Assembly: GCA_001179505.1 (NCBI GenBank)
Contig: CDMY01000826.1
Location: forward strand, 1 to 17,099
DNA length: 17,099 bases
Direction: 5' to 3'
Source: Vitrella brassicaformis CCMP3155
Lineage: Eukaryota > Protista > Chromerida
Shown: piece by piece, positions 224 through 15,485 of the stretch
How positions within the stretch are numbered: position 1 is the stretch's first letter
How the letters are laid out: every line of letters begins with the position of its first letter
Made by a program: the position numbers and the translations under genes
Notes under the pieces: model-generated
Told to the model about the DNA's origin: nothing
Database searches by the model: none
Seen by the model: only the letters and a program-made list of their open reading frames with translations

Positions 224-368
224 ATATTGGCGTGTCTGTAGTAGTGCAAGCAACACAGCCCCGCTACCGATTTCCCTTTTTTCTTCCATACGATCGTGAT
301 CGAACGTTTTGTCTGCCGAACGTGTTGTTTCTTAAAGACGCAAATTGGGCTCTAGCCCAATTCGCGGA
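224..368. repeat. Dispersed non-coding repeat, copy 1 (inverted relative to 4827-4947), ending in a hairpin
   Basis: ATATTGGCGTGTCTGTAGTAG...CGATCGTGATCGAACGTTTTGTCTGCCG...AATTCGCGGA aligns to the reverse complement of 4827-4947, with a 22-nt and a 2-nt indel. Hairpin AATTGGGC-tcta-GCCCAATT at 343-362. Confidence 0.85.
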
Positions 369-546: not shown

Positions 547-1224
547 TCACAGCCCCGCAGCGGGGCTGGTATTTGGCCTGTATGGCCCGCGGCTGACGAA
601 GTCCTCCGGAAACGCGCTGGCCCTCCGTGGCCCTCTGGCGGCCGCCGCGCGCTGCGCACGACTCGCCACTTGGAACGCGTTGTGCTTCATCAGCTCGACG
701 GACAGGAGCTGGCTCCAGTGGTTGACGATGCTCTCTCGGAAAGCTGTGTCCTCCTCCCTGGGAATGGATGTGGGGCGAGGCTTTCGCTTGGCGAGCATCT
801 TGAGAAAGTCCATGGTCTTGTCTCCCCATCTGCCGAATGTCTCAGCAGCGAGGGGCACGAAGCGGAAGCCGGCTGCTTGGGTGATTGGTCCATACTTGTC
901 GATCTTGTCTTTCTCCGCAAGCTGAGCCGCCTTGCCACCTGGAAGCTGTGCACTACGCCGGTTGACTATTCGGTGGAAGGGGATGGGGGAGTTGTCAGGG
1001 CGGCAGGGGTGGGCGATGGTGACATCGATCAGGTAGTCACGGCCGTCGATCACGCAGTAGATGTTCATACGCTGGCTTTTGGGGTTGTCGTCGGGCGGGG
1101 TCATAGCGAGGCTGTGCAGAGACACGTCCACATTGGAGGGAACATCTGCCTCAGCCAGGATGCGAACAAACAAGTTGCGCATGTTGTTGTGTCTCGTGAC
1201 TGTTTTTTCAAGATCTGGAGTACA
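547..1224 (-). mobile_element. 5'-truncated non-LTR retrotransposon remnant: restriction-like endonuclease (RLE) C-terminus (CRE/R2/NeSL type)
   Basis: The ORF 547-1353 contains C...TRHN, RMNI...YLIDVTIAHP, AEKDKIDKY and FVPLAAETFGRWG, the motif order of PD-(D/E)xK RLE domains. No RT domain and no complete CCHC knuckle are present. The 3' UTR may extend to ~371. Confidence 0.85.
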
Positions 1225-1688
1225 CCTGACCGACTCACGGACAGACGGAGGTAGTCGGTCAGGTGGACTGACCCTCGACCTGGATGGTTCGCTTCTCCAG
1301 CTGTGAGTCAGCCACCACACGCTATGAGTCGTGACAACCGGTTTATTGGTCACGACATGAAGTAGACGATGAGGGAAGAATTCTCAGACTGATTGCATGT
1401 GTTTGAATGGCTCAATACATGCATTCATGTGTTGCGCGAATCCGTTCATTCGATGACTTCGAAAAAAACCAGCAAATCCGCTTCGGAGTGGGTAACCGAC
1501 GCACGCACCCTCAGCAATACGTAAAACTAGCGCCGGCCAGCCTGTGTTCATGTTTTCAGCGTGACAGACCATGAACTGTCTTTCTTCTCTGCTACTGCTT
1601 TGCTCTGCCCAACTTTCAGCACAGACCTTGCCTTGCCGTGTTCAGATCCCATTCCACGGAAGCAAAACAGACAGGCGGCCAGGCAGCC

Positions 1689-4600
1689 TCACCTCATGTC
1701 TTCTAGGCAGTTTCTTCGCCCGGATATCACCCCTTTCAGCGAGTGCAGCCCTCCCCTTTTCTTATCTCTGGTCTCATCCAGTTCACATTCGCCAGTGTCT
1801 TCGAAGAAGAAGAAGGTTTCGCATGTGTCGCTGGTCATACACAATTCGGCACACTCATTGACGGCAGCCATGTCCACAACAGCACTTCCTGCCCCGGACT
1901 TAGGTCTGTCCATGTGTTCTCGCCTCCCGATGTCGGGCTGGTAGCAGCTGCAGGGCACCGCAGTCGCGGGAGGGGACAGAACACCAGCATAGCCCGGCTC
2001 ATCATAGGATGACAGGATCATGGGCACTGAGGAGGAGCAGAGATACAGATCCTGAGGCGTGGGGTAGGCACGGTACACATTCTCGCCCACCTTCGAGTGT
2101 CTTTGACGCTCGAAGTAGCTCGTCGTCGCCCTTGACGGGCACCACACGCACATACAAGTCCGCAGACGAGGTGTCACTGTTAGGCGTCACAGTGAAGTTC
2201 TCCGCCGCCATGGCGTCTACAAGCTCCTGCAGTGTGATGATCTCCTCGAATGCCGTCTTGTCGCGCTCAATAAGGGGCTTGTCGAGAGGAACATCTCTGT
2301 CGGTACCCACATACAGGCGCCACTTGTTGATGCCTTCATTAGAGGAGAATATCCGAAAAGACGGAGAGGTGGAGGGAAATACAGAGGTGATTGCCGGCAC
2401 GTACCTGTAACCCCATTGAACGAAAAGTGGAGGGTCCAGTCCTGCAGCTGGTCAATCGACCCGTTACGTGTCGAGGCTTCCCCGTTTGCGTCGCTGCAGA
2501 GAAGGAGTCGCGGCGCTTCAGTCGAAGAGCCTTCCCAGGGGTGCAAAAGCGGTCGATGACCACGAAGGCCCTCGAATTCGCGGACTATGCGGGGGTTGTC
2601 TTCATATGTCACTTCAGTGAAGAAAGGCCCTGTATAGCCCCAGCCAATCAGCATCGTCGCAGGTTGGCCTCTAAAGGAGAGAGAGAGAGAGAGAGGCAGG
2701 CTCCAAGCCGCAATTGGACAAGAACACATCTACCACCTTCCGTTGTCGATCATCTGGAGCCCACCACAACATTTGCTCTTCAGCCTGGACACAAGGAAAA
2801 GACACGAATGGCGCTGCTTTTGTGCGCCCGCGAGTGTGATATACCCAGATGGGTGCGAAAAGGACCACACTTTCGTGGCGGTCATTTGATCCAGGTCCAG
2901 CTGCAGCTCGAGCACCCGAGAGGGCCGCGGCGACCCGTGCTTCACATGGCGTCCGTTATCATACCTGTCACAACCGCATACATTCATCTGCATATAGTGC
3001 AGACAACACAAATCATTTGGTCCCCTGACATGATGATGTTCCCATTAAAGAGTTGGTGAGCATCGTGCTGGCCGAAGAAGGGAGGATCCATGTCATCGCC
3101 GACGAAGGTAAAATCACTGCGTAGCAGATATGAAATGCATGGGAGCAAACATCAACCGCTTGCGTTGACATACCTTGTCTTGCCCCCCAAGCGCCAAAGG
3201 ATCTTACCGGTCTTGCCGCTGAGCAAGACGATCAGTCCGCAGCCGTGGAATGAGAGGATCAGATTGCCTAAACGCACATGACCAAAATAAGTGGTCAAAC
3301 TACATGCGGTATGCCGAGCGGTCTTCTTTACCATCGGGTGTTCGCTGAGCGTTGTTGATATGATAGTACTGGCACAAACATGCTCAAAGACAGACGATTG
3401 CATAAACAATTTTGTTTCTGAGATAGGTGTACATCGTTTGGGCTTTCTCTTAGGTCCATCAGCACGGGATCGGCTTCTTGCACAAAGTCATCGATCGTCC
3501 GCCATTCGAGCACTACATTCCTGTCAGCGTCCAGAACCTGCACTACTGGAGACAAGAACCCGGAAAGACGTGTGCGTACTGGATGAAGAGTCTCACCGTT
3601 ATGTATGACGCCGTCGGTCCTGGTGAGCGCTGCCAGAATCGTGTTGCCATAATCGAAAAATATGCTATGGCCGTCTAATTTATAGCCATGGCCTGAAATG
3701 ATGAATCTGCAAGTAGACCAAGGTTGGGATTCACCATTTGCGTACCGGGATTGTGCCTAGCGACAGCCTGGTATGTGGAGTTGAGCTCGTATGCCTTGAG
3801 GCTGGTGTCTTCTGGTCTAGTGTCCCACACTGCCACATGGCCAGTCGGCGCCACACCCAGCACACCCGCCGCGAACGTAGATGTGTGAGTCCACCATACT
3901 AAGACACCCTGCACACATACGTGAAAGAATAACCAAGAATCTACAAACACGTGTTCGTGATGTGATCACTTTGTTTACATCACGTGTAGTGATGATATGC
4001 TGGCCTGCATGTTCTCCCCTTGCGTGCCCGACACCAAAAAAATAGAGGTCTCCTTCTGCGCCAGTCGCATCATTCCTCTCGTCCACGGCGGCCTTCTCGC
4101 CCTCGGGAGATGGCTTCAACTTGGCAGCCCATGTTGGCAGTGTGCGGTAGCGATCCATCGGTGTGGGCCCCTTAAGCCCTTCCTGCTCGTCTGGCTGCTC
4201 GCTCTCCCGATCCAAATAGTCGAACTTAGCTGGAACGCTCGCTGCCTTGTACTTCGTTCGTATCCGAAAGCTCCACTCGTAGGGGCCTGCCTCACGCTCA
4301 GTGAAATTCTCAGAGCGTCGCACGCGCAGGCCGGGACCGAACTTAACGGTGACCTTCTCGTTTTCGACGAAAGGCCGGCCAGCATAGAAGACCACTGTTT
4401 TGTTGTCGCGGGCCAACACAACCGTTCCCTTGACAAGGCCACTTTCTTGTCCAGTGACGTTGAAGAGGCCGTACAAGTCGGCTGGAATGACCTCTTCGCC
4501 TTCTCTGATGGCGATGGAAGTCAACTCCGACACGTGCAGCGCATCTGCACGAGGATGGATGTACTCATACTGTCCGTCGCCATACGGCCTAACGGCACCC

Positions 4601-4716
4601 TCCACGATAAACCGCTTCTGAATCACTTCGAGCGCTGACGCAGGCGGACTCAACATGCACAGCATGCCGAGGCTGATGCCCAGCGTATACCTCCCTCCTG
4701 CAGAAAAGACCACCAT
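1689..4716 (-). CDS. Gene A: secreted arylsulfotransferase-like protein with N-terminal Ig-like domain and C-terminal Apple/PAN domain (~780 aa, 12 exons)
   Basis: Exons (minus): 4716-3979, 3908-3746, 3692-3597, 3545-3433, 3368-3332, 3267-3174, 3116-3030, 2964-2845, 2784-2737, 2670-2405, 2333-2091, 2026-1689. All introns are GT-AG (51-71 nt), phases are consistent, total 2343 nt. ASST motifs: DGH, VLEW, YYHINN, WRLGG, FGQHDAH, YDNG, LIGWG, FSFNGVT. Hydrophobic N-terminus ending PASA. Six-Cys domain at 1946-1707. Confidence 0.9.
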
Positions 4717-4826
4717 AACACTACGAGGCTACAGAAGCGGGAAGGATCCCTGTCGCGCGCTTGCCGTTTCTCGACAATCCGGCTGACACCGGAAAAAGGA
4801 AGCGCTGCTGGCAACTACATAAGATG

Positions 4827-4947
4827 TCCGCGAATTGGGCTGTGCCAATTTGCGGCAGACAAAACGTTCGATCAGGATCGTATGGAAGAGAAAAGGAAAA
4901 ACGGTAGCGGTGATGTGTTGCTTCCAGTACTACAGACACGTCAATAT
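4827..4947. repeat. Dispersed non-coding repeat, copy 2, 110-230 bp upstream of the gene A start codon
   Basis: Reverse-complement match to 224-368. Hairpin CCGC-G-AATTGG-gctgtg-CCAATT-T-GCGG at 4828-4855. Confidence 0.85.
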
Positions 4948-5370
4948 CATCATCATCATGACCATCCCACGGACCACTAGACGGACGGGTCGTTTTACCG
5001 CGAGCTTTGGCGAGCTTTTGCAAAAAACCCGTGGAAAAAATTGCATCCATTGCCCGCACGGTTTTTGCACGGCAGCAGCACACAGCAGACCCCCACACCT
5101 CAGGGCGTCCAGGACGAGCGAAAGAAACGGTGAAAACAGCACCAGAAACGGGGAACAGACCAAGACAAACAGAGAGGGAACCAAAGGGACACTGCAGAAG
5201 GCACGCAGGAGGCCACACAGCAGCGAACGAAACTCATAGAGCACGCTTGGCGCAAGAAGGGTGTAGCCCGCGTTTTTCACGTTCCGAAAGGAAAAAGCAA
5301 GAGCGATGAGTCCTTTTCTCAGACCAAACTTGCTGGGACGTGTGTACCCTCCACAGGGTATGCGTACACG

Positions 5371-5409
5371 TCCCCCGTCGGCTTTCCCGCCGGGAAAGCC
5401 GACGGGGGA
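5371..5409. repeat. Perfect 18-bp GC-rich inverted repeat (hairpin) within a cluster of hairpins
   Basis: TCCCCCGTCGGCTTTCCC-gcc-GGGAAAGCCGACGGGGGA; the arms are exact reverse complements. Confidence 0.95.
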
Positions 5410-5572
5410 GGTGGGTGGGTGTTTCTCTATATGGTGGCCGGCTATGGTGACCACGTATGGGTGATGTGAGACACCCATGGCCGGCCACCTCGTGGCCAGT
5501 CGGGCCAGGATCACGCCCGTCTCCCAAGCGAAGCAACCGAGGAGGGTTGTCTGTAGTGATGCAGTGATTCAC

Positions 5573-5592
5573 TGAATGAATGAATGAATGAA
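5573..5592. repeat. (TGAA)5 microsatellite
   Basis: Read directly. On the minus strand it lies just upstream of an acceptor-like CACTACAG, so it is probably intronic. Confidence 0.95.
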
Positions 5593-6295
5593 GTGAATAA
5601 ATTTATTGATTGACTGACAAGCAAGCACACACTTATGTGACTCGACTGACGCCCTGTCATTGCGGAATGGCGAAGTGTCTTCTCCTCGCGTCATGGCTCG
5701 CGTCGTTTGTGAGTTTCGCACAAGCACTTCACTGCAATTGCGTCGCATTCGATTCATTGGGGCCTGTACGGGTTCAAGGCTTGCCTGACGCTGGCAAGGA
5801 GTCTGTAAGAGTCCGTTTCACGTGATAACGAATTGATCCACACGTTTGACAACCCACGATGCACACCGTTTGGTGGTTGGGGTGTGTGTACCTTTATTGG
5901 TCGGTTGTCCTTTGAGGCGAAGAGAGCGACGGCCACATGCGTGAGGACCGAGGTGGGAGAGGTGTATCCACATTATAGTTTGGGATTTTTGACGGCTGTC
6001 TAAACTTTCGGTGACGGTTCTCCTTTTGACGGGGCGGAGAGCGATAGCCGTTTGCGTGTGAATACAGCATAGCGAGATGTATCATGCATTGACACAATCG
6101 TGCTGATTTAGGTTGGCGGCTGTGTGAACTTTCGGTGGCTGGAAGACGGCGCAGGGCGATGGCCGCTGGCGTGCAGACACAGCATGACGAGATGTATCAC
6201 ACATACATGATTTTGCGTCGAATGAGTGAGAGTCCCGAAAGAAATCAGCACAAATCGCCGAATTCCGTGTAACCGACACCAGTGTTCGCCACCTT

Positions 6296-6684
6296 TTACC
6301 CGAACGACAGGGCGCAATTGCAACTAGAAGCAAACTCGTCTCTGGCAGCGTCCGTCCGTGCGCATATATTTTCGTCAACCAGATCGACCTTGAAGCGTTG
6401 CAAGGAGATTGCGGTGGAGCTAGCGGTGAGCAAGTTTTCAGCGGCTATGGTCTCCTTTGCGGGGACGAAGAGCGACGGCCGCTTGCGTACGAAGAGACCG
6501 TAAAGCAGTGTGGCGTGGCGCAAGGGCGCGCTTTCTAATGAAATTTGGGGGGCGACGGGAGTGATAGGTAACTATAGGTGCATCAGGACCGCATCGATGC
6601 CCGCTTTCACATGAGACGCGTGCGGCCCCCAGTCTCCTTCAGGCAGAGGATGGTACGGAAGGGGTTTCGAGGGCAGGTCAGCCA
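6296..6684 (-). pseudogene. Possible decayed exon of an unidentified gene
   Basis: After acceptor-like ATGCAAG the frame reads ADLPSKPLPYHPLPEGDWGPHASHVKAGIDAVLMHL*LPITPVAPQISLESAPLRHATLLYGLFVRKRP...SFG, with one TAG (6574-6572), and ends at donor-like GG|GTAAAA. No family recognised. Confidence 0.3.
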
Positions 6685-6782
6685 CTTGCATGTGCCAATT
6701 GGGTGAGAGCCAGAAGGTGCAAATGTGAGGAGGCCTGACGGTTGAGCAGGGTCAGTGCGGTGAAGGGCGCGCCTTACGGCTC

Positions 6783-6850
6783 AGACCGGTCATCTGAGTG
6801 GCGGAGGAGTTCGTGTCGTGATCCGAATTGTCCCGAGTTCGAACCCAACG
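6783..6850 (+). other. Degenerate tRNA-like sequence (possible SINE head or tRNA pseudogene)
   Basis: An A-box-like CTGAGTGG, an anticodon-arm-like TTCG..TCGTGA TCCGAA and a B-box-like CCCGAGTTCGAACCC occur at tRNA-like spacing. Acceptor and T stems do not pair. Confidence 0.35.
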
Positions 6851-6865
6851 CAGCTACTGAAAAAC

Positions 6866-6900
6866 ATCTAGGGGAATAAAAATCTAGGGGAATAAAAATC
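6866..6900. repeat. 16-bp tandem repeat (ATCTAGGGGAATAAAA) x2.2
   Basis: Exact copies at 6866-6881 and 6882-6897, then ATC. Confidence 0.95.
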
Positions 6901-7470
6901 GACGGCGGAAGACTTTGGAAAGATTGCATTATTGCTTCTGCAGATCAGATTTTTCCGACAAACTTGACAGAATCGTTGACTTTGACAGATTTTTCGTTTT
7001 CTTTGCATATGATGGACATAATCGTTAATGTGTGTGCATCCCCCGCCACCCTGTGTGGCAGCGTTCATTGAAGAGACGTGCGCGACCACCAGTGGGCGTA
7101 CACAAGCAACCTCAGACTCAACAGAGAGAGACATCATCGCGACCAGGTGACTCAGGTGAGCATCAAGCTTACGCACTGACCTCATAGTGCGAGAACCTTA
7201 AGCGAGGGTAAGCACAAGTGACACATCACTGACAGACAGTCGCACCAAGCGAGCGACAGACATACCACGCGTCGCGACAGGACGCCAATCAATCGACCAC
7301 CAACCAAGGAGGGAGCCCTCGTGCAACGAGTACGGCATGTAAGAGGTGTGGCATGTGAGGCACCCCTTCGCCATTCCCGCCTCGTCCAGTCGTGTCTCAC
7401 CCATCCGAGGGTGGATTGACTGTGTCTCGGGCACTCGAAGGCGGTGGCGGTGGTGGGGGGAGAGGTGGAG

Positions 7471-7770
7471 NNNNNNNNNNNNNNNNNNNNNNNNNNNNNN
7501 NNNNNNNNNNNNNNNNNNNNNNNNNNNNNNNNNNNNNNNNNNNNNNNNNNNNNNNNNNNNNNNNNNNNNNNNNNNNNNNNNNNNNNNNNNNNNNNNNNNN
7601 NNNNNNNNNNNNNNNNNNNNNNNNNNNNNNNNNNNNNNNNNNNNNNNNNNNNNNNNNNNNNNNNNNNNNNNNNNNNNNNNNNNNNNNNNNNNNNNNNNNN
7701 NNNNNNNNNNNNNNNNNNNNNNNNNNNNNNNNNNNNNNNNNNNNNNNNNNNNNNNNNNNNNNNNNNNNNN
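7471..7770. other. Assembly gap (300 N) flanked by G-rich low-complexity sequence
   Basis: Run of N. Flanks GGCGGTGGCGGTGGTGGGGGG and GGTGGTGGGGTGGAGGGGG read as poly-Pro on the minus strand. Confidence 0.99.
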
Positions 7771-7931
7771 GGTGGTGGGGTGGAGGGGGCGCACCTGGAG
7801 GAATCGGTTGAGAGTCTCCCCCTGGGCTAGAAGAGGGGGATATAATACATAGCCCCCATGAGTGACAGGCGGTTGCGGTTTGCTGCGGGGTTTGCCGTAG
7901 ATGGAAAAGCTCCCCCATAGGGTAATGGGGA

Positions 7932-8882
7932 ACGGCCTGCCCCACCAGGACATGCCAGGCAAGTGCGACGGCGAGCGCCCAAATGGGGCGAGGTGCGGTG
8001 CCGACTTCACCGTCCAACACGCGCTTGGCTGCTCCCTGGGCGGGCTGGTGTATGCCAAACACGACCGGCTCAAGCACAAGGTTGGCGGTCTGTGTCAGCT
8101 GGCGGGCCTCAAGGTGGCGTACGAGCACACGGTGTGGAAGGAGACCGCCCACACCGCCGCCGCCCGCGATCCCCGTGCCGTCCCTTTGGGTGTGACCCCC
8201 TGTGACGGTGCCGGCCACCCTCATCCCTCTCCCCCCCTCCCCACCCACCTGACCCTCCGGACCCGCCCGACCCACACACTGCACCCGACGAGCCTGATGG
8301 TGTCCACAACGACCCCTCCGTCCGCACGGACCTGTTCGTGTCGAGGTTTTGGCCAAGCGGCCGCGAGCTGTGGATCGATTTCTGCGTTACCGACGCTGAC
8401 GCTCGCTGCAACCGGGGCAACCGGCGCGATCACCCGCGAGAGGGAGAAGCTCAAGAGGGACCACCATCTCGACGTGTGTCGGCTCAACCGCATGGACTTC
8501 ACGGCTTTCATCGTGACGTGTGACGGCGTCTACGGGAGGGAGGCCGATCGCTTCATTCGCCGCTTGGCCGAGCTCATCAACAAGAGGGGCGGATGGGACA
8601 GATATGGCACTGGTCGGGTCGAGCAATGGATCCGGGCGCGGCTGTCAGTGTGCCTGGCTCGTTCGGTGTCTGCGTGTCTGCGGCGGCCCCGGAGGAAGGG
8701 CCGGTGGCACTGGCTGTATCAGAGGGGGCGCTGGGGTGATGGGGCTGGGATGTTCGTGCCTGGGGAGCCTCTCGTCTTCTGAGGGTGCCCCCCCTGTGAG
8801 TAGACGTGTCGAGATAGTACGTGTTGATTGGCCTGGATGTCTGTCTGTCTGGTTGGCCGTCTGTCTGTCTGTCTGTCTGTCT
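7932..8882 (+). mobile_element. 5'-truncated, frameshifted non-LTR retrotransposon remnant (CCHC knuckle + RLE) with (GTCT)n tail
   Basis: GLPHQDMPGKC...RCGADFTVQHALGCSLGG...KHD (zinc knuckle). RTDLFVSRFW...LWIDFCVTDADA lies in a second frame (8323-8400). The reading returns to the first frame for EKLKR...FTAFIVTCDGVYGREA...WIRARLSVCLARSVSACLR, with stop at 8782, followed by GTCT repeats. Confidence 0.85.
8839..8882. repeat. Interrupted (GTCT)n microsatellite: 3 units + 6 units
   Basis: GTCTx3 at 8839-8850 and GTCTx6 at 8859-8882. Sits where a retroelement 3' tail is expected. Confidence 0.95.
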
Positions 8883-9435
8883 GGCAATCTGCATGTCTGT
8901 CCATTGCATTCACGTGTGCTGCTCGTGAGCATCGTTTGTCCATTTGAGTGTCTGTAGCTCGTTATCATTACATCACGATCGACTGTTCATGTTTGTTCGT
9001 GCCGTGGACCAACGAGTGTGTGGCCCCCGGCGCATCGTTACACATCAACCACAAAGTGAGGCGCTCGTAAGAACCGGTGAGACTTGATCAAGTGCGAAAC
9101 CGAGGGGAACCCGGAGAAACCCCGTAACGGCTAGCTAAGCTCGCACGTTCCAAAGCTTCTTTCGGAAGGACGCTTTGACAAAGGGCGGGAGGCGATATGA
9201 GCGCACGGGCCCTCATTCTTCATCGTCTCACAGAGGTTGAGAGAAAGACCAAAAAGCGGCACACAAGCCCGTTAGAAAACGCTACACGTTAGAATTGCGG
9301 GAATTTGTGTTTCACCTGGGATATTTCAAGGGCCCCATTTGGTAGTTTAAGTATATATTTGGTAGGTTAAGCGGCCTGCGTGTACATAGTGGCGTGAAGT
9401 GGGTGTTTTATAACATAGTGAACTCTCATAGTGTC

Positions 9436-12318
9436 ATGGATGTCTCGTACACGCTGGCCATCAGCTTCGGCATAGTGTGTATCTTGAGTCCGCCTGCGTC
9501 AGCGCTCGATGCGAAGCGCTTCGTTGTGGAGGGTGCCGTAGGGCCGTATGGAGACGGGCAATACGAGTACATCCATCCCCGTGCAGATGCGGTGCATGTG
9601 TCGGAGCTGACGTCCATTGCCGTCAGGGAGGGCGATGAGGTGATCTCTGGCAACTTGGCCGACCTCTTCGACGTTACTGGAGAGAAAAGCGGCCATGTGA
9701 CGGGTAGAGTTGTGTTGGCCCGCGACAACAAGACGGTAATCTTCTATGCTGACCAGCCCTTCGCCCAACGGGAGAAGGTCAGTGTCAAGTTCGGCCCCGG
9801 CCTGCGCGTGCGGCGACCTACCAAAGGTACACGTTATCGAGTGGGCGAGTACACATGGCAATTCCAGATACGGCGGCAGTTTGAGCGAAAATTCAAAGAG
9901 CAGGAAGGTGCAAAGGGAGAAGAGAAGGGGACAGCGCCGATGGATCGCTATCGCACGCTCCCGTCGTGGGCTGCACGGGTGAGGCCGTCTTCCGAAAGCA
10001 AGAAGGCGGCCTTGGACAAGAGAAATGCGATTGGCGGGCAAGGAGACCTCTGCTTTCTCGGTGTCGGTCACGGGAGGGGAGAACATGCTGGCCAGCATAT
10101 CAGTATTACGCGCGAGGTGAGCAGCACAGTGTTTGGGGAGAGGACGGTTATGCGTATTGTCATCTGTAAAGGGTGACTTAGTGTGGTGGACTCACACATC
10201 TACCGCCCAGGCGGGTATGCTTGGTGTGACGCCGACTGGTCATGTGGCAGTGTGGGACAGGAGATCGGAGCACGCCAGCCGAGAGGCATTCGAGCTTAAC
10301 TCCACATACCAGGCTGTCGCTAGGCACAGTCCCGGTAAACAATTGACGGGCTCCCCAACCTTTGCTATCTGGCAGGTTCATCACTTCAGGTCATGGCTAT
10401 GAATTAGACAGCCATAGCATCTTTTTCGATGATGGCAACACGATTCTGGCAGCTCTTACCAAGATCGACGACGTAATACATAACGGTGAGTCTTTTCCGC
10501 CATGTACGCACAAATCTTCCCGCTTTCTTTTCTGCAGTAGTGCAGGTTCTGGACGCTGACAGGAATGTGATACTCGAATGGAGGACGACTGAAGATTTCG
10601 TCGGAAAAGCCGATCCCGTGTTGCTGGACCTAAGAGAAAACCCCCCCGACGTACACCTATATCATAAGCATCTTATACATGGAATCATCTGTCTTTGGAT
10701 ATGGGTGTGCCAGTACTATCACATCAATAACGCGCAGAGGACACCTGATGGTAAGCCTAGCTGCTCAGCTGACCATCAGTAGTTTGACAACTTCTTCTGG
10801 TCATGTGTGTAAGGCAATCTGATCGTCTCTCTTTACGGCTGCGGACTGGTCGTGTTGCTCAGCGGCAAGAGCGGTCAGATCCTTTGGCGCTTGGGGGGTA
10901 AGACAAGGTACGTCACTGCCAGGGGCCGACATTCGCTCCCATGCATTTGCATGAGTGCTACGCAGTGACTTCACTTTCGTCGGCGATGACATGGATCCTC
11001 CCTTCTTCGGCCAGCACGATGCTCACCAACTCTTTAATGGGAACATCATCATGTCAGGGGACCAAATGATTTGTGTTGTCTGCACTATATGCAGATGAAT
11101 GTATGCGGTTGTGACAGGTATGATAACGGACGCCATGTGAAGCACGGGTCGCCGCGGCCCTCTCGGGTGCTCGAGCTGCAGCTGGATCTGGATCAAATGA
11201 CCGCCACGAAAGTGTGGTCCTTTTCACACCCATCTGGGTATATCACACTCGCGGGTGCACAAAAGCAGCGCCATTCGTGTCTCTTCCTTGTGTCCAGGCT
11301 GAGGAGCAAATGTTGTGGCGGGCTCCAGATGATCGACAACGGAAGGTAGCAGATGTGTTCTTGTTCAATTGCGGCTTGAAGCCACTCTCTCTTTTTTCCT
11401 TCAGAGGCCAGCCTGCGACGATGCTGATTGGCTGGGGCTATACAGGGCCTTTCTTCACTGAAGTGACGTATGAAGACAATCCCCGCATAGTCCGCGAATT
11501 CGAGGGCCTTCGCGGTCATCGACCGCTTTTGCACCCCTGGGAAGGCTCTTCGACTGAAGCGCCGCGGCTCCTTCTCTGCAGCGACGCGAACGGGAAAGCC
11601 TCGACACGTAACGGGTCGATTGACCAGCTGGAGGACTGGACAATTCACTTCTCCTTCAATGGAGTCACAGGCATCAGCAAGTGGCGCCTCTATGTCGGTA
11701 ACGACAGAGACGTCCCTCTCGACAAGCCCCTTCTTGGGCGCGACAAGACGGCATTCGAGGAGATCATCACACTGCAGGAGCTCGTGGACGCTTTGGCGGC
11801 CGAGAACTTCACTGTGACGCCTAGAAGTGACACCTCGTCTGCGAACTTGTATGTGCGTGTGGTGCCCGTCAAAGGCGACGACGACCTGCTCAGGCCGTCG
11901 AAGGCACTCAAAGGTGGGCGGGCGAGGCCGTGTACCGTGCCTATCCCACCCTCAGGATGTGTATCTCGTCTCCTCTTCAGTGCCCATGACCCTGTCGTCC
12001 TATGATGAGCCGCGCCGTGCGGGTACTCTGTCCCCTCCCGCGATGGTGGTACCCTGCGGCTGCTACCAGCCCGACATCGGGCGGCGAGAGCACTTGCACA
12101 GACCTAAGCCGGGGGCAGAAAGTGCTGTTGTGGACATGGCTGCCGTCAATGAGTGTGCCGAATTGTGTAATGCCAGCGACACATGCGAAACCTTCTTCTT
12201 CTTCGAAGATAATGGCGAATGTGAACTGGATGGGACCAGATACAAGAAAAGAAGAGGGCTGCACTCGCTGCAAGGGGTGATATCTGGGCGAAAAAACTGC
12301 TTGGAAGACACGAGGTGA
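9436..12318 (+). CDS. Gene B: inverted paralogue of gene A; arylsulfotransferase-like protein with Ig-like and Apple/PAN domains (~761 aa, 11 exons)
   Basis: Exons: 9436-10116, 10172-10334, 10390-10485, 10538-10650, 10714-10750, 10814-10907, 10966-11052, 11118-11237, 11298-11345, 11405-11913, 11981-12318. All GT-AG, total 2286 nt. Exon lengths after exon 1 equal those of gene A (509 = 266+243). The ATG context aligns with the gene A start. PAN domain at ~12061-12300. Confidence 0.9.
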
Positions 12319-12968
12319 AGCGGCCTAGTCGCCTGTCTGTTCGCTTCCGTGGAGTGGGATCTGAACACGAGAAGGCAAGGTCTGTGCTGAAAGCTGGCGA
12401 GAAGCTCAAGAGAGACAGTTCATTGTCTGTTGACAGGTTTTTGCAGTCATTCTGCCGCGCCAAGCGCAGGCTGGCGCTAGTCCTACATACTGCTGAGAGT
12501 ATTACAAGAGTGTTTTTCTTTTCTTCCCTTTTTCTCTTTCCTGTTCCTTTTTTCTTTGTTGCGAGGCTGGAGGGGGTTGGTCACTGACCGGTGTGCGTTT
12601 CGTGCTGTGTACTGTTGTGCGTGGACCGCTCTCCCCCAATTATTGTGAGTGAGAAGGTCATTCAGTCATTTATTTATCGGGCGTACACAGTGACTCCCAA
12701 ATTTCCACATCCTAATGACGCATACATGCTTGGCATACGGACCATACGCTACCACAGATCAATCGACACACACATACTGGGGGGCTAGGAAGGGAGGGCA
12801 GGGTGGAGACAAAGACCTTAGCCAAGGAAACCTTGGTAGCGGGAGGCTGCACGCAGCGTGCACTGTGTGTCTGCAGTGTGTGTGCGCGCTTCTATCGAGC
12901 CTTTGTATCTTTGCTTCAGTTCATTTCTGAAAGACGGCATACACTGTGCCTGTCTTCTGAAGATTCAG

Positions 12969-15485
12969 CTACCCACATGGCTTTGTCTCTACTGTAGACG
13001 ATCGGCTCATTTGCTTTCCCTCAGCATCAAGAGCGACAGCTTGGAAGTACTGGCATTTCTCGGCGCCCTCTGGGACATCCACCCAGTGCTCGAATTGCTT
13101 TCTCTCAACCTCGGCATACACTACTGTCACCGGCTTATCATATTGACCCATGAAAATCCGCCATTTCTGTGTGCGAGTATCACCATTCCACGAGAAGTGA
13201 AGCCGGAGAGTCTTCGCTTTGTTATTGTCATCCAGGAGGGCTGTCGACGGCCACGCAGGGGTCCCGATCCAAGGAGCCTTGATCGTGCGATACGCCCAAA
13301 GATTCCGAGACGCAAATTGCATTTCGACCACCGATTCTCCCTCGTCAGTCACTTCAAGGTAAAAAGGGTTTCCTCTACTGTATCCTGATTTCATTTGAAA
13401 CCCCAGGGAAATCGCACGATTGGCGTTGGACAGGCGCCTGTATCCACCGATGGCGTAACTGACACGGACAGGCACGCAAGGAAATGGAGGTATCAGATCC
13501 CGAAAGTATCAGCTGCAAATATCTTTATTTCCATACGACGGAAGGCCGGAGTTGAACGATGACACGAGACGAGCAATCTTCTGCGTTGCGTTGACTTCGA
13601 GTTGATAGTCCACAGCGCGAGCCGTCCCGATTCCAATTCGGTAGTGATTGTCGAAGAGTGTAATCTTGTTATCTCCTATATCTCTCCCGTCGTGTTGTCC
13701 AATGAATGTGCCCCTTGGGTCGCCGATGATCCTGCCACACAACGCCGATCTCAGAAGACAGTCTGGCTTCCTTCCCGGCGTTACCTGAAGTTTGCACCCC
13801 TGCCCCCGAGCCGCCATATGATCTCGCCTGTATCCCTATGTATCTTGACCAATTGACTCAAGATTCGCAGCGATATGAGAATGCTCCCGTCGTCCATCTC
13901 CTCCAAAGAGTTTGCATGTGCAATATCCCATACGCGCCTGTCAAGAAGTATGCATTGAACGGCATGCATATGTACCGGACGCCATCTATTTTTCGAACTC
14001 GACATACGTCCGGGCTCTTTCATCGGCATGACCGTGTACGACACCCTTCTTTCGCACATTTGAAGTGCTTTCCCACAGTAGGCGAGGCATGTGGTCCCAA
14101 CTTCGCCATTCCAGTATGACTTGCCCTGGAAGGAACGTATACCAGACAGAGACAGAATTCGACTGTCTCGTTACGAATCTTGTGGTGTGATTTCTTGAAC
14201 GATGAATCCAATTAGCGACGCCATACTCGATGATCCGCCAAGCTTCAGCTTCCCGTTTTTCTTGTCTACCTTAATTGGCTGAGGGTCATATACCATGATA
14301 AGGCCAGTACCCTTCCTTGCTAGCTGGAAGTCATGATAATTCCAGCGAGCCCCGTGATCCGCCGCGAAAGCAGCGTCTTCTGAGTAATCAGCCCCACCAA
14401 TGACGATCGTATCGTTCTTCTCCCGAAGAACGAGACGCTGGTCACGTGTTGGGGAAAATGCCCTCAATGGTAGTGGTTCGTAATAGACAGGATCACCGAG
14501 GGAGGTAGTGATCATTCGGAACTTATCGGATTCAGAGGAGATGTTGAGGTTCCATGAGGAGGTGAACACATATCCAGGGGAGAGTCTGGTGAGGTCCCCA
14601 GCTGTCACCTCCATTCGTGGGTATCCGGAAGGGAGAGTCCTGCACATCCACACACCCAACAAACACATTTGACCAAAACAAACAGATTGACCACCTGTAG
14701 GCACAGCTTGGAGCATAAATAACACTATCATCCTCCCCTTCGTCTTCACAATCATCACTGCCCATGATATGCCTGGGGTCTTCGGGGACGGACGTAGTGT
14801 TGCCATCGTTGGCCCCACCTAGCAGCCACATCATATCATTCATCTTCCTCAGAAGCTGCACATCCTCTGGACTCGATACAGATTTGCCTGCGAAGTCGCG
14901 GGAGTCCGTGTTGGAAGAAGAATATGTATCTTCTCTGCGCCATGAGATTGTGAAGCTCCATTCGGCAGCGGGCAAGATGTCCCCGCTGACCCTGATACCC
15001 GACCGAACATTGACGTAGGCTCTCTCGCCGGGCTTGAAGGGTGTGCTGGGCCTGAACCATATTGTTCGGCCGTCCTTGAGGATGAGGATGCCTTCATCCG
15101 AGTGTTCGCCCGATTCTTCACCTCGGACGCTAATCTTGCCCTCGATGCTGTCTTTGTCGGGGTTGCCATTCGGTCGGAAGGCGATGGTCGTGAAGGGCGA
15201 GACGAGTACCGCGTATGGAAGGGGGTGCGCATAGACAAAAGGAGTAGTCTCCTTCAAAACTTGAAGGTTCACACAAGGCTGCGGCTCACTGTCTTCATCC
15301 CGCAGCTTAGGTCCTGCCTTCGGGTCAATCCCATTCGTGCGAAGAGAAGACAACAGCTGTTCTGTATTGCGTCGAGACACAGCTTCATCACTGATCGCCT
15401 TGCCTCGGCGCCCCAGCAAGGCAACAGCAACAAAGAGAATATTCACACTGTGCAAGACCGGTGAATTGAGGTTTCTGGTACACAT
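12969..15485 (-). CDS. Gene C: divergent arylsulfotransferase with N-terminal Ig-like domain, canonical active-site motifs, no PAN domain (6 exons, ~736 aa; one unresolved phase conflict)
   Basis: Exons (minus): 15485-14695, 14639-14175, 14125-14008, 13937-13785, 13731-13537, 13458-12969. Motifs: YRTLP, NYHDF, VQEI..GQVILEWRSWDH, WDIAHANS, ISLR, WRLGG, GQHD, LFDN, FSWNGDT. Total 2212 nt is 3n+1 because of the exon 2/3 junction. Confidence 0.8.

What the first reader, a model, noticed from the sequence alone, without database searches (positions are those of the whole stretch)
1689..15485. Candidate system: one canonical ASST (C) clustered with two PAN-fused, active-site-altered ASST paralogues (A, B)
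Seen: three ASST-family genes with signal-peptide-like N-termini within 14 kb. C has an intact catalytic motif set and no extra domain. A and B gained an Apple/PAN module and lost the conserved Arg. Known: ASSTs transfer sulfuryl groups between phenolics without PAPS; Apple/PAN domains of apicomplexan microneme proteins bind glycans or host receptors. Inference: a secreted module pairing a working sulfotransferase with surface-binding enzymes or pseudoenzymes that recognise sulfated or phenolic ligands. I know of no description of this combination, but I could not search.
Basis: partly seen in the sequence, partly recalled or inferred. Interest (0 to 1): 0.75.

Follow-up and report, generated by a model that had tools for sequence, protein, structure and literature searches.

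The report
Vitrella sulfotransferase-like paralogue cluster
Three genes for secreted, bacterial-type sulfotransferase-like proteins do sit together on this small scaffold of the coral-associated alga Vitrella brassicaformis, but they look like local copies from a large gene family first noted in 2015, not a dedicated three-part system.

Summary
The window is the whole scaffold CDMY01000826.1 of Vitrella brassicaformis CCMP3155.

**What holds up**
- All three ASST-family genes are real.
- A (CDS 4716-1689, minus strand, 12 exons, 780 aa) equals CEM34579.1. A fully spliced cDNA contig matches it at 100%.
- B (9436-12318, plus strand, 11 exons, 761 aa by my model) is A's head-to-head inverted duplicate.
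- Both are built as signal peptide, Ig-like sandwich, Cpz4/ASST-type propeller, C-terminal sandwich, PAN/Apple.
- Both keep the three catalytic histidines and two asparagines.
- The sulfuryl-binding Arg is His390 in A and Tyr371 in B. It is Arg in about 90% of 174 homologues.
- A versus B gives dN/dS 0.31, so both copies are under constraint.
- C (15485-12969, minus strand, 719 aa) has the full motif set and no PAN.

**What does not hold up**
- PAN was gained once at the base of a Vitrella clade whose other members mostly keep Arg. Gain of PAN and loss of Arg are separate events.
- C is a distant, long-branch paralogue (28% identity to A). Its exon 2/3 junction is suspect.
- No recurring unfused-plus-fused pairing appears at six other family loci.

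**Other points**
- The N gap (7471-7770) lies in the A-B spacer, outside all three genes, but A's linkage to B and C rests on it.
- The scan had already found ASST-PAN genes on other DNA of this genome.

The parts
1390..4971 (-). Gene A transcript (CDS 4716-1689, 12 exons, 780 aa, = CEM34579.1 / A0A0G4GV94). Layout: signal peptide, Ig-like sandwich, ASST propeller, C-terminal sandwich, PAN.
   Evidence: My exon model equals P0172 exactly. The spliced cDNA contig L002 (JGI 3300017297) matches all 12 exons at 97.6-100% in BLAST pieces, mostly 100%, and it translates to exactly the 780-aa protein. Pfam. AlphaFold2 model pLDDT 82.9. Best fold match is Cpz4, 9kf6, E 1e-28.
1689..2026 (-). A exon 12: linker plus PAN/Apple domain, with Cys at residues 694, 696, 727, 731, 737, 749, 775.
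   Evidence: PAN_1 28.1 bits for the ORF that holds this exon, 25.4 bits in the full protein. Cysteine positions.
3245..3247 (-). A codon CAC = His390, in place of the sulfuryl-coordinating Arg (E. coli Arg374, Salmonella Arg335).
   Evidence: The role of the Arg is taken from bioRxiv 10.64898/2026.10.08.757629 and PMC13426309.
9436..12318 (+). Gene B CDS (11 exons, 761 aa by my model; annotated as 638 aa). Inverted duplicate of A with the same domain order.
   Evidence: All introns are GT-AG and colinear with A. L003 shows the 5' UTR plus exon 1 spliced to exon 2. MMETSP protein P0175 has the same length, with B-specific N- and C-terminal parts.
10834..10836 (+). B codon TAC = Tyr371 at the Arg site.
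   Evidence: This is the only Tyr at this column among 174 homologues. No transcript that carries this codon was found.
12969..15485 (-). Gene C CDS (6 exons, 719 aa in the only in-frame canonical model). Unfused ASST-like paralogue with the full motif set (His366, His448, Asn450, Arg465, His505, Asn520).
   Evidence: The model length equals the annotated product length of 719 aa. Motifs.
14125..14227 (-). C exon 2/3 junction zone, from the last base of model exon 2 to the first base of exon 3. The model's intron (14126-14226) still encodes the conserved segment SMASLIGFIVQEITPQD. The short intron GTAACG..CCAG that homology calls for leaves the frame off by one.
   Evidence: The segment lines up by eye, residue for residue, with P0009 RINAAVFTEQDKYG... 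(sequences). The family HMM scores 577 bits with the segment kept (X at the break) against 553.5 without it.
7471..7770 (.). Assembly gap (300 N) in the 4.7-kb spacer between the divergent genes A and B. It is flanked by G-rich repeats.
   Evidence: It lies outside the transcripts defined by L002 and L003.
2690..3135 (-). Gene-conversion tract of A, 96% identical to B 10947-11392. Introns 7 and 8 within it are 100% and 96.7% identical.
10947..11392 (+). Partner arm of the conversion tract, in B.
2334..2404 (-). A intron 10 (71 nt), precisely absent from B (B junction at 11670/11671).
   Evidence: The same intron position is occupied in the genes of paralogues P0005 and P0003.
7925..8782 (+). 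Annotated 285-aa ORF in the spacer with no Pfam family. Unidentified, possibly repeat-derived; not part of the family.
547..1182 (-). Annotated 211-aa ORF inside a repeated element. It has copies on another Vitrella scaffold.

Best explanation
The locus is a product of local duplication within a large family found only in Vitrella in my searches. I saw about 19 gene models. The family encodes secreted, bacterial-type, PAPS-independent sulfotransferase-fold proteins of the Cpz4/ASST type.

Shown:
- A and B are a young head-to-head inverted duplicate pair.
- They still exchange sequence by gene conversion.
- Both are kept by purifying selection.
- A is transcribed and correctly spliced.
- C is an old, fast-evolving, unfused paralogue lying tail-to-tail with B.

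Inferred mechanism: each protein enters the secretory pathway. The propeller takes a sulfuryl group from a sulfate-ester donor onto His431 (A numbering), helped by His309, His373, Asn375 and Asn446, and passes it to a hydroxyl acceptor. The C-terminal PAN/Apple module tethers the enzyme to a glycan or protein ligand at the cell surface or wall. Bacterial relatives appear to do the same with CBM_4_9 modules.

In A and B the Arg that clamps the sulfuryl group is replaced by His and by Tyr. I think this most likely retunes donor choice, pH dependence or rate, rather than abolishing catalysis. I put that at about 60%.

The three genes are neighbours because of how they arose, not because they need each other.
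For: - Identity of the window and of gene A.
- Spliced cDNA of A. Partial spliced cDNA of B.
- Inverted duplication with a mosaic of 72-96% identity, and introns 7 and 8 at 97-100%.
- dN/dS is 0.31 overall, 0.27 and 0.09 in the propeller exons, 0.53 in the PAN exon.
- Sequence and fold match to Cpz4 (9kf6: phmmer E 1e-28; Foldseek E 1e-28, TM 0.79) and to E. coli ASST (E 1e-12).
- Active-site table.
- All 15 Vitrella rows form one 100% supported clade against bacterial and metagenome sequences. Ten of them, holding most PAN-bearing members, form a nested 100% clade. A and B are sisters. C sits on a long branch.
- Other family loci are singletons or duplicate pairs.
- Bacterial relatives carry CBM_4_9 or T9SS tails.
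- Woo et al. 2015 (PMC4501334, Appendix 5) already report a Vitrella-specific amplification of a predicted secreted protein with an 'arenylsulfonase' domain.
Against: - No enzyme activity, localisation or ligand is known for any member of the family.
- I found no mutational data on how the ASST Arg tolerates His or Tyr.
- One other locus (unfused P0007 next to a Trefoil-fused copy) also pairs an unfused gene with a lectin-fused one. A functional pairing is therefore not excluded.
- C's expression and true splice form are unknown.
- A's linkage to B and C crosses an unverified scaffold gap.
Confidence: 0.7

Rival explanations
1. C is the working sulfotransferase. A and B are PAN-anchored readers or pseudoenzymes that bind the sulfated or phenolic products, so that the three act together as a writer-reader set at the cell surface.
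For: - A and B have lost the Arg that is conserved in about 90% of homologues, and C keeps it.
- All three have secretory-type N-termini.
- The genes are adjacent.
- A second locus also pairs an unfused copy with a lectin-fused copy.
Against: - The catalytic His and the other four active-site residues are intact in A and B, and the propeller is under purifying selection.
- PAN-fused paralogues with Arg exist, so PAN does not mark dead enzymes.
- C is the most divergent Vitrella member on the tree and has a doubtful splice junction.
- Other family loci do not share the arrangement.
- There is no expression evidence for C.
Confidence: 0.1
2. C is a decaying or dead copy, and only A and B are functional genes at this locus. 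The 'canonical' motifs of C are leftovers.
For: - The canonical short intron leaves the frame off by one.
- The only in-frame model deletes 17 conserved residues, including the family's Q-E motif.
- C is on a long branch of 1.81.
- C lacks the conserved WG motif after the NGN motif.
- No transcript was retrieved.
Against: - An uninterrupted 719-aa reading frame with six GT-AG exons exists and was annotated.
- All seven active-site residues are kept.
- The off-by-one could be a single-base assembly error in a GGG run.
- The two empty scans also missed a known expressed paralogue, so they say nothing about expression.
Confidence: 0.15

Closest known systems
Cpz4, the ASST-type sulfotransferase of caprazamycin biosynthesis in Streptomyces sp. 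(PDB 9KF4/9KF6)
   Same: It is the best sequence match (phmmer E 1e-28 over A residues 287-624) and the best fold match (Foldseek E 1e-28, TM 0.79). It shares the propeller plus C-terminal sandwich, the three histidines, the HxN motif and the QHD motif.
   Different: Cpz4 is a 472-aa bacterial protein with no signal peptide-Ig-like N-terminus and no PAN. It has Arg where A has His and B has Tyr. Identity is about 24%. Its acceptors are reported as liponucleosides (bioRxiv 10.64898/2026.10.08.757629). That its donors are sulfated polyketide pyrones is from my own memory and was not checked here.
E. coli CFT073 aryl-sulfate sulfotransferase (PDB 3ELQ, 3ETS, 4P04-07)
   Same: Same propeller fold (Foldseek E about 1e-12). 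Same catalytic residues: His252, His356 and His436, and Asn358.
   Different: Only about 14% identity. It is a periplasmic bacterial enzyme. Arg374 is present there and replaced in A and B. It has a different N-terminal domain and no binding module.
Bacterial ASST-like proteins fused to CBM_4_9, Big_5 or T9SS tails (Bacteroidota, Ignavibacteriota, Chloroflexota and similar)
   Same: These are the nearest non-Vitrella relatives by sequence and by model. They share the Big_5-like N-terminal sandwich and the design of a propeller plus an appended binding or sorting module.
   Different: The module in Vitrella is a eukaryotic PAN/Apple domain (Trefoil in some paralogues). The Vitrella genes are intron-rich nuclear genes.
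Other Vitrella ASST-PAN paralogues (CEM02383.1; the proteins held here as P0005, P0151 and P0012; CEM03341.1; CEM22862.1), which appear to be the 'arenylsulfonase-domain' amplification of Woo et al. 2015
   Same: Same family, mostly the same architecture and the same organism. A and B are nested inside this clade.
   Different: A and B are the only members seen with His/Tyr at the Arg site, apart from P0151 (His, arising independently) and P0012 (Lys). They also form an inverted, converting pair.

Membership tests
PAPS-independent aryl-sulfate sulfotransferase (ASST; Pfam PF05935 / PF14269) | Profile match above the curated threshold | tested here: met
   A: 54 and 58.8 bits against cut-offs of 24.2 and 27. 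The ORF holding C's exon 4 alone: 43 bits against 27, and the annotated C product hits both families. B: shown through the B/A mosaic protein P0175 and colinearity with A. B's own joined model was not sent to any database tool.
PAPS-independent aryl-sulfate sulfotransferase (ASST) | Beta-propeller fold like the solved ASSTs | tested here: met
   AlphaFold2 model of A: pLDDT 82.9, pTM 0.80. Foldseek hits: 9kf6 at E 1e-28 and TM 0.79; 3ELQ and 4P05 at E about 1e-12. Not modelled for B or C, which have no sequence reference.
PAPS-independent aryl-sulfate sulfotransferase (ASST) | Catalytic histidine that carries the sulfuryl group (E. coli His436) | tested here: met
   A His431, B His412, C His505. 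The column is invariant in 167-174 homologues.
PAPS-independent aryl-sulfate sulfotransferase (ASST) | Two further conserved histidines and the HxN asparagine (E. coli His252, His356, Asn358) | tested here: met
   A: H309, H373, N375. B: H290, H354, N356. C: H366, H448, N450.
PAPS-independent aryl-sulfate sulfotransferase (ASST) | Sulfuryl-coordinating arginine (E. coli Arg374, Salmonella Arg335) | tested here: not met
   A has His390 and B has Tyr371. C meets it with Arg465. So A and B are ASST-fold family members with one canonical active-site residue missing.
PAPS-independent aryl-sulfate sulfotransferase (ASST) | Sulfuryl transfer between a sulfate ester and a hydroxyl acceptor | not testable with these tools
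   Needs an enzyme assay.
PAN/Apple domain (PF00024) | Profile match above the curated threshold | tested here: met
   A: 25.4 bits in the full protein, 28.1 for the ORF holding the last exon. B: 29.2 for the ORF holding its last exon. The cut-off is 21.4.
PAN/Apple domain (PF00024) | Six-cysteine Apple pattern and fold | tested here: inconclusive
   Seven Cys sit at 694, 696, 727, 731, 737, 749 and 775, spaced like an Apple domain. The model is weak here, with pLDDT 36-80.
Functionally linked gene cluster ('system') | The same combination recurs at other loci or in other genomes | tested here: not met
   Six other family loci were checked. Three are singletons. Two hold fused copies only: the P0154/P0003 head-to-head pair, and P0005 with P0151 on one contig. 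One is an unfused plus Trefoil-fused pair. No relatives with PAN were seen outside Vitrella.
Functionally linked gene cluster ('system') | Co-expression of the members | not testable with these tools
cDNA contigs show A, and the 5' part of B, in two different samples. Nothing was found for C.

The most novel reading that the evidence does not exclude
A and B are ASST-derived proteins that have moved away from ordinary aryl-sulfate transfer. They would be either PAN-anchored binders of sulfate esters, or enzymes with a different donor or a different chemistry made possible by the Arg-to-His/Tyr change. With C (or another Arg-bearing paralogue) they would form a writer-reader pair that patterns sulfated wall or surface polymers in a photosynthetic relative of apicomplexan parasites.
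Probability: 0.07. Interest if true: 0.7.

Novelty: new variant of a known kind. Interest (0 to 1): 0.33.

Why it matters
PAPS-independent sulfotransferases are regarded as essentially bacterial. Here a free-living relative of Apicomplexa has a large, intron-bearing, expressed family of them. Many members are fused to PAN/Apple, the adhesion domain that apicomplexan parasites use on host surfaces.

If these proteins sulfate or bind surface glycans, they would bear on how the proto-apicomplexan cell surface was built. They could also add eukaryotic enzymes to the ASST biocatalysis toolbox.

The natural Arg-to-His and Arg-to-Tyr variants, kept under selection in a young duplicate pair, offer a ready test of what that Arg does.

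The specific 'three-gene system' claim does not add to this. The cluster is explained by duplication.

Tried and rejected
That left four things untested: the gap, C's junction, B's Tyr codon in RNA, and co-expression.

2. Retrieving C's annotated protein.
- A word search with paralogue P0009 did not return it.
- A word search with an alignment of P0009, P0183 and C's six exons given by reference did not return it either.
- C was therefore handled exon by exon, plus a joined model used only in local scripts. The joined B and C models have no reference and were not sent to any search, fold or look-up tool.
- As a result there is no Pfam scan of whole C, no structure model of B or C, and no exact look-up of C's cDNA.

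3. Transcript contigs of C. An exact 35-mer of exon 4 and a degenerate protein scan in metagenome contigs both came back empty. The second scan also missed the known cDNA of P0009, so the collection probably lacks these samples and the blanks mean nothing.

4. Literature. No paper holds Vitrella with arylsulfotransferase, or ASST with 'PAN domain'. The supplements of Woo et al. held as text have no Pfam entry for the family, but the main text has the 'arenylsulfonase' sentence. Templeton & Pain 2016 is not held.

5. Intron-position comparison with P0009 to settle C's junction. P0009 has no intron at that place, so the comparison is uninformative.

6. Rejected: reading transcriptome proteins P0175, P0179 and P0152 as evidence for real recombinant genes. 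They are mosaics of paralogues, most likely assembly chimeras.

7. Rejected: the ORFs that span the gap. They are artefacts of N being translated as X.

Full report
**Origin and gene models**

The window is the complete 17,099-bp scaffold CDMY01000826.1 of Vitrella brassicaformis CCMP3155, assembly GCA_001179505.1. ORFs are short and interrupted, which points to a eukaryote with introns.

I aligned the two strands and read the splice sites.
- Gene A is on the minus strand. It has 12 exons, all GT-AG, CDS 4716-1689, 780 aa.
- That model is identical to CEM34579.1 / A0A0G4GV94, held here as P0172.
- A 2,897-nt contig from JGI sample 3300017297 (L002) is a fully spliced cDNA of A. It matches the 12 exons at 97.6-100% in BLAST pieces, mostly 100%, translates to exactly the 780-aa protein, and spans window 4971 to 1390. 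A is therefore transcribed and spliced as modelled.
- Gene B is on the plus strand, 9436-12318. By the same logic it has 11 GT-AG exons and 761 aa. The public annotation gives 638 aa.
- Gene C is on the minus strand, 15485-12969. It has one in-frame canonical model of six exons and 719 aa, which equals the annotated product length.

The joined models of B and C have no reference. I used them only in local scripts and sent them to no search, fold or look-up tool. C was searched exon by exon.

**The gap**

The 300 N at 7471-7770 lie in the 4.7-kb spacer between the divergently oriented A and B.
- The gap is about 2.5 kb from A's cDNA 5' end (4971) and about 1.55 kb from B's (9323).
- No gene of the finding crosses it. 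The ORFs that seem to span it are N read as X.
- It does mean that A (left contig) is joined to B and C (right contig) only by scaffolding.
- Both edges are G-rich GGTGG-type repeats on the same strand. That fits one simple repeat broken by the assembler, but it is weak evidence.

**What the proteins are**

Domain and fold evidence for A:
- Full-length A passes the Pfam thresholds for Arylsulfotran_2, Arylsulfotrans and PAN_1.
- Against solved structures its only sequence hits are 9KF4 and 9KF6, at E 1e-28 over residues 287-624.
- An AlphaFold2 model from a 70-sequence alignment has pLDDT 82.9 and pTM 0.80.
- Its best fold matches are Cpz4 of Streptomyces (E 1e-28, TM 0.79), then E. coli ASST at E about 1e-12.

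The model shows this order of parts:
- a hydrophobic N-terminal helix, taken as the signal peptide;
- an Ig-like sandwich (about residues 50-155, weakly Big_5-like);
- a disordered linker;
- the propeller (about 220-560);
- a C-terminal sandwich (about 577-675), which Cpz4 also has;
- a low-confidence linker;
- the PAN region (about 720-775), with seven cysteines in Apple-like spacing.

There is no room for a plastid transit peptide between the hydrophobic stretch and the first conserved domain.

**Active site**

Published structures name His252, His356, His436 (the residue that carries the sulfuryl group), Asn358, Arg374 and Thr501 in E. coli. The Salmonella equivalents are His242, His317, His401, Asn319, Arg335 and Asn421.

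I aligned 255 retrieved homologues to a family HMM; about 174 of them cover the active site. The table reads across the sites His1, His2, Asn, Arg site, catalytic His, Asp, Asn.

| Gene | Seven-site pattern | Residue at the Arg site |
|---|---|---|
| A | H-H-N-**H**-H-D-N | His390, codon CAC at 3245-3247 |
| B | H-H-N-**Y**-H-D-N | Tyr371, codon TAC at 10834-10836 |
| C | H-H-N-**R**-H-D-N | Arg465, codon CGA at 13865-13867 |

- The Arg column is R in 157 homologues, H in 5, K in 4, L in 3 and Y in 1. Three of the five H rows are A itself or the mosaic P0175.
- Among columns conserved at 85% or more, the Arg site is the only one where both A and B differ from their nearest paralogues.

**A and B as a pair**

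- They are inverted repeats from about 1604-4690 to 9447-12402.
- Identity is mosaic. Exon 1 has dS 0.69. Exons 7-10 have dS 0.14. Introns 7 and 8 are 100% and 96.7% identical. This is the mark of a recent gene-conversion tract at 2690-3135 and 10947-11392.
- dN/dS is 0.31 overall, 0.27 for exons 2-6 (which hold the Arg site), 0.09 for exons 7-10 and 0.53 for the PAN exon. Neither copy is drifting like a pseudogene.
- B precisely lacks A's 71-nt intron 10. That intron position is filled in the genes of P0005 and P0003, so B lost it.
- Evidence that B is expressed: L003 (JGI 3300017148) joins B's 5' UTR and exon 1 to exon 2 at my junction.
- MMETSP protein P0175 has B-specific ends but an A-type middle. 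I read it as an assembly chimera. P0179 is a similar chimera.
- I found no transcript that shows B's Tyr codon.

**Gene C**

- C shares only about 28% identity with A, and 30% with the unfused paralogues P0009 and P0183.
- Its closest relative is a 727-aa ASST-plus-Trefoil gene on another scaffold, at 37.5%.
- In the tree it sits on a branch of 1.81, against a median of 0.74.
- It departs from the consensus at 11 of about 58 highly conserved columns, as many as B and more than A.
- It lacks the conserved WG motif after the NGN motif.

The exon 2/3 junction is the main problem.
- Homology calls for ...IVQEITPQD joined to GQVILEWRSWDH. By eye this lines up residue for residue with P0009 (sequences).
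- The short intron that would do this, GTAACG...CCAG, leaves the reading frame off by one.
- The only in-frame canonical choice uses an upstream donor, A|GTATGG. It removes 17 residues that still read as conserved coding sequence, including the family's Q-E motif.
- The family HMM scores 577 bits with the segment kept (X at the break) and 553.5 without it.
- Three readings remain open: one extra G in a GGG run is an assembly error; it is a recent real frameshift; or C really makes a shortened blade.
- I found no transcript of C. My two scans for one were uninformative.

**The family**

- Word searches, the full-library search and cluster look-ups show about 19 Vitrella gene models. They cover.
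- The models seen are A, B, C, P0005, P0151, the P0152 locus, P0184, P0154, P0003, P0006, P0012, P0015, P0040, P0024, P0025, P0009, P0007, the Trefoil-fused neighbour of P0007, and a partial A-like copy, CEL92060.1.
- In a maximum-likelihood tree of 52 sequences, all 15 Vitrella rows form one clade with 100% support against bacterial and metagenome proteins.
- Ten rows, holding most PAN-bearing members, form a nested 100% clade; P0015 and P0040 are PAN-bearing too but lie outside it. A and B are sisters inside it.
- Most members of the ten-row clade keep Arg. P0151 reached His independently, and P0012 has Lys.
- PAN fusion and Arg loss are therefore separate events, far apart in time.
- I saw PF00024 together with ASST domains only in Vitrella.
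- The nearest Atlas clusters are all bacterial. Several carry CBM_4_9 or T9SS tails. 'ASST propeller plus a binding module' is thus a common bacterial design, and Vitrella uses a eukaryotic module for it.
- Woo et al. 2015 (PMC4501334, Appendix 5) already state that Vitrella has a lineage-specific amplification of a predicted secreted protein with an 'arenylsulfonase domain'.
- I found no paper on function or on the PAN fusion.
- Earlier notes of this scan report ASST-PAN genes on at least four other pieces of this genome.

**Is it a system?**

Three family genes in 14 kb is far more than chance for a family of about 19. But clustering is the family's habit.

| Locus | Layout |
|---|---|
| P0005 and P0151 | share one 31-kb contig |
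| P0154 and P0003 | head-to-head |
| P0007 and the Trefoil-fused copy | head-to-head |
| P0009, P0012, P0015 | each stands alone |

Only one other locus repeats the 'unfused plus fused' layout. With C's integrity in doubt and no co-expression data, local duplication is the sufficient explanation.

**Mechanism proposed**

Shown: the architecture, the retained catalytic set, purifying selection, and expression of A.

Inferred:
- secretion;
- ping-pong sulfuryl transfer through His431;
- tethering by PAN to a glycan or protein ligand;
- a retuned rather than dead active site in A and B.

Support for 'retuned': His and Tyr can still hydrogen-bond a sulfuryl oxygen. The same column changed independently in P0151 and P0012. 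The catalytic nucleophile has no reason to be conserved in a pure binding protein. My odds are about 60% still catalytic, 25% binding only, and the rest open.

That the nearest solved relative, Cpz4, sulfates a sugar-type hydroxyl of a liponucleoside, using a sulfated polyketide donor, is from my own knowledge beyond what states. It hints at non-phenolic acceptors.

**Verdict**

The domain and motif reading is supported. The 'system' and 'pseudoenzyme' inferences are not. This is a locally duplicated part of a published but uncharacterised Vitrella family. The pair carries an interesting natural active-site variant. Interest is modest.

Noticed in passing
window 2334-2404 (A intron 10) against B 11670/11671: B precisely lacks a 71-nt intron that A has. 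The paralogue genes of P0005 and P0003 keep an intron at the same position. This is a clean intron loss inside a young duplicate pair, as expected from recombination with a spliced cDNA.
   Followed up: partly
window 2690-3135 and 10947-11392: This is a gene-conversion tract between A and B. It is 96% identical overall, with introns 7 and 8 at 100% and 96.7%, while exon 1 has dS 0.69. Earlier scan notes describe similar converting palindromic pairs elsewhere in this genome.
   Followed up: partly
proteins P0175, P0179, P0152 (MMETSP / UniRef transcript entries): Transcriptome-derived 'Apple domain-containing' proteins are mosaics of different paralogues. P0175 runs B-A-B. P0179 is a P0152-like N-terminal half joined to an A C-terminal half. 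P0152 ends with A's exact PAN exon. These are probably assembly chimeras, so such entries should not be used as gene evidence.
   Followed up: partly
protein P0173 = CEL92060.1 on a 3,648-bp scaffold: A 255-aa product is 94% identical to A's exon 1. It is either a third A-like copy or an uncollapsed haplotype.
   Followed up: no
window 224-318 and 4853-4947; window 709-1200; ORFs 547-1182 (-) and 7925-8782 (+): Repeated-element sequence flanks gene A. There is a 95-nt inverted repeat at 91%, and the first part of the window is about 85% identical to two places on scaffold CDMY01000435 (L008). The two annotated ORFs here have no Pfam family.
   Followed up: partly
L006 5966-9612 (CDMY01000783.1): A 727-aa ASST-like gene with a weak Trefoil/P-type hit lies head-to-head with P0007. 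It is the closest paralogue of C (37.5% identity). So the family uses at least two different lectin-type modules, PAN and Trefoil.
   Followed up: partly
L007 (CDMY01000682.1), around P0005: The Arg-bearing ASST-PAN gene P0005 sits among genes with Branch (core-2/I-branching), GT_PLOD and Glyco_transf_43 domains, plus a separate PAN protein. P0184 is annotated as Branch plus ASST plus PAN. This hints at a link with glycan synthesis.
   Followed up: no
window 12319-12968: B and C are convergent, with only 650 bp between their stop codons. If B's 3' UTR is as long as A's (about 300 nt), the two transcripts end within a few hundred bases of each other or overlap.
   Followed up: no
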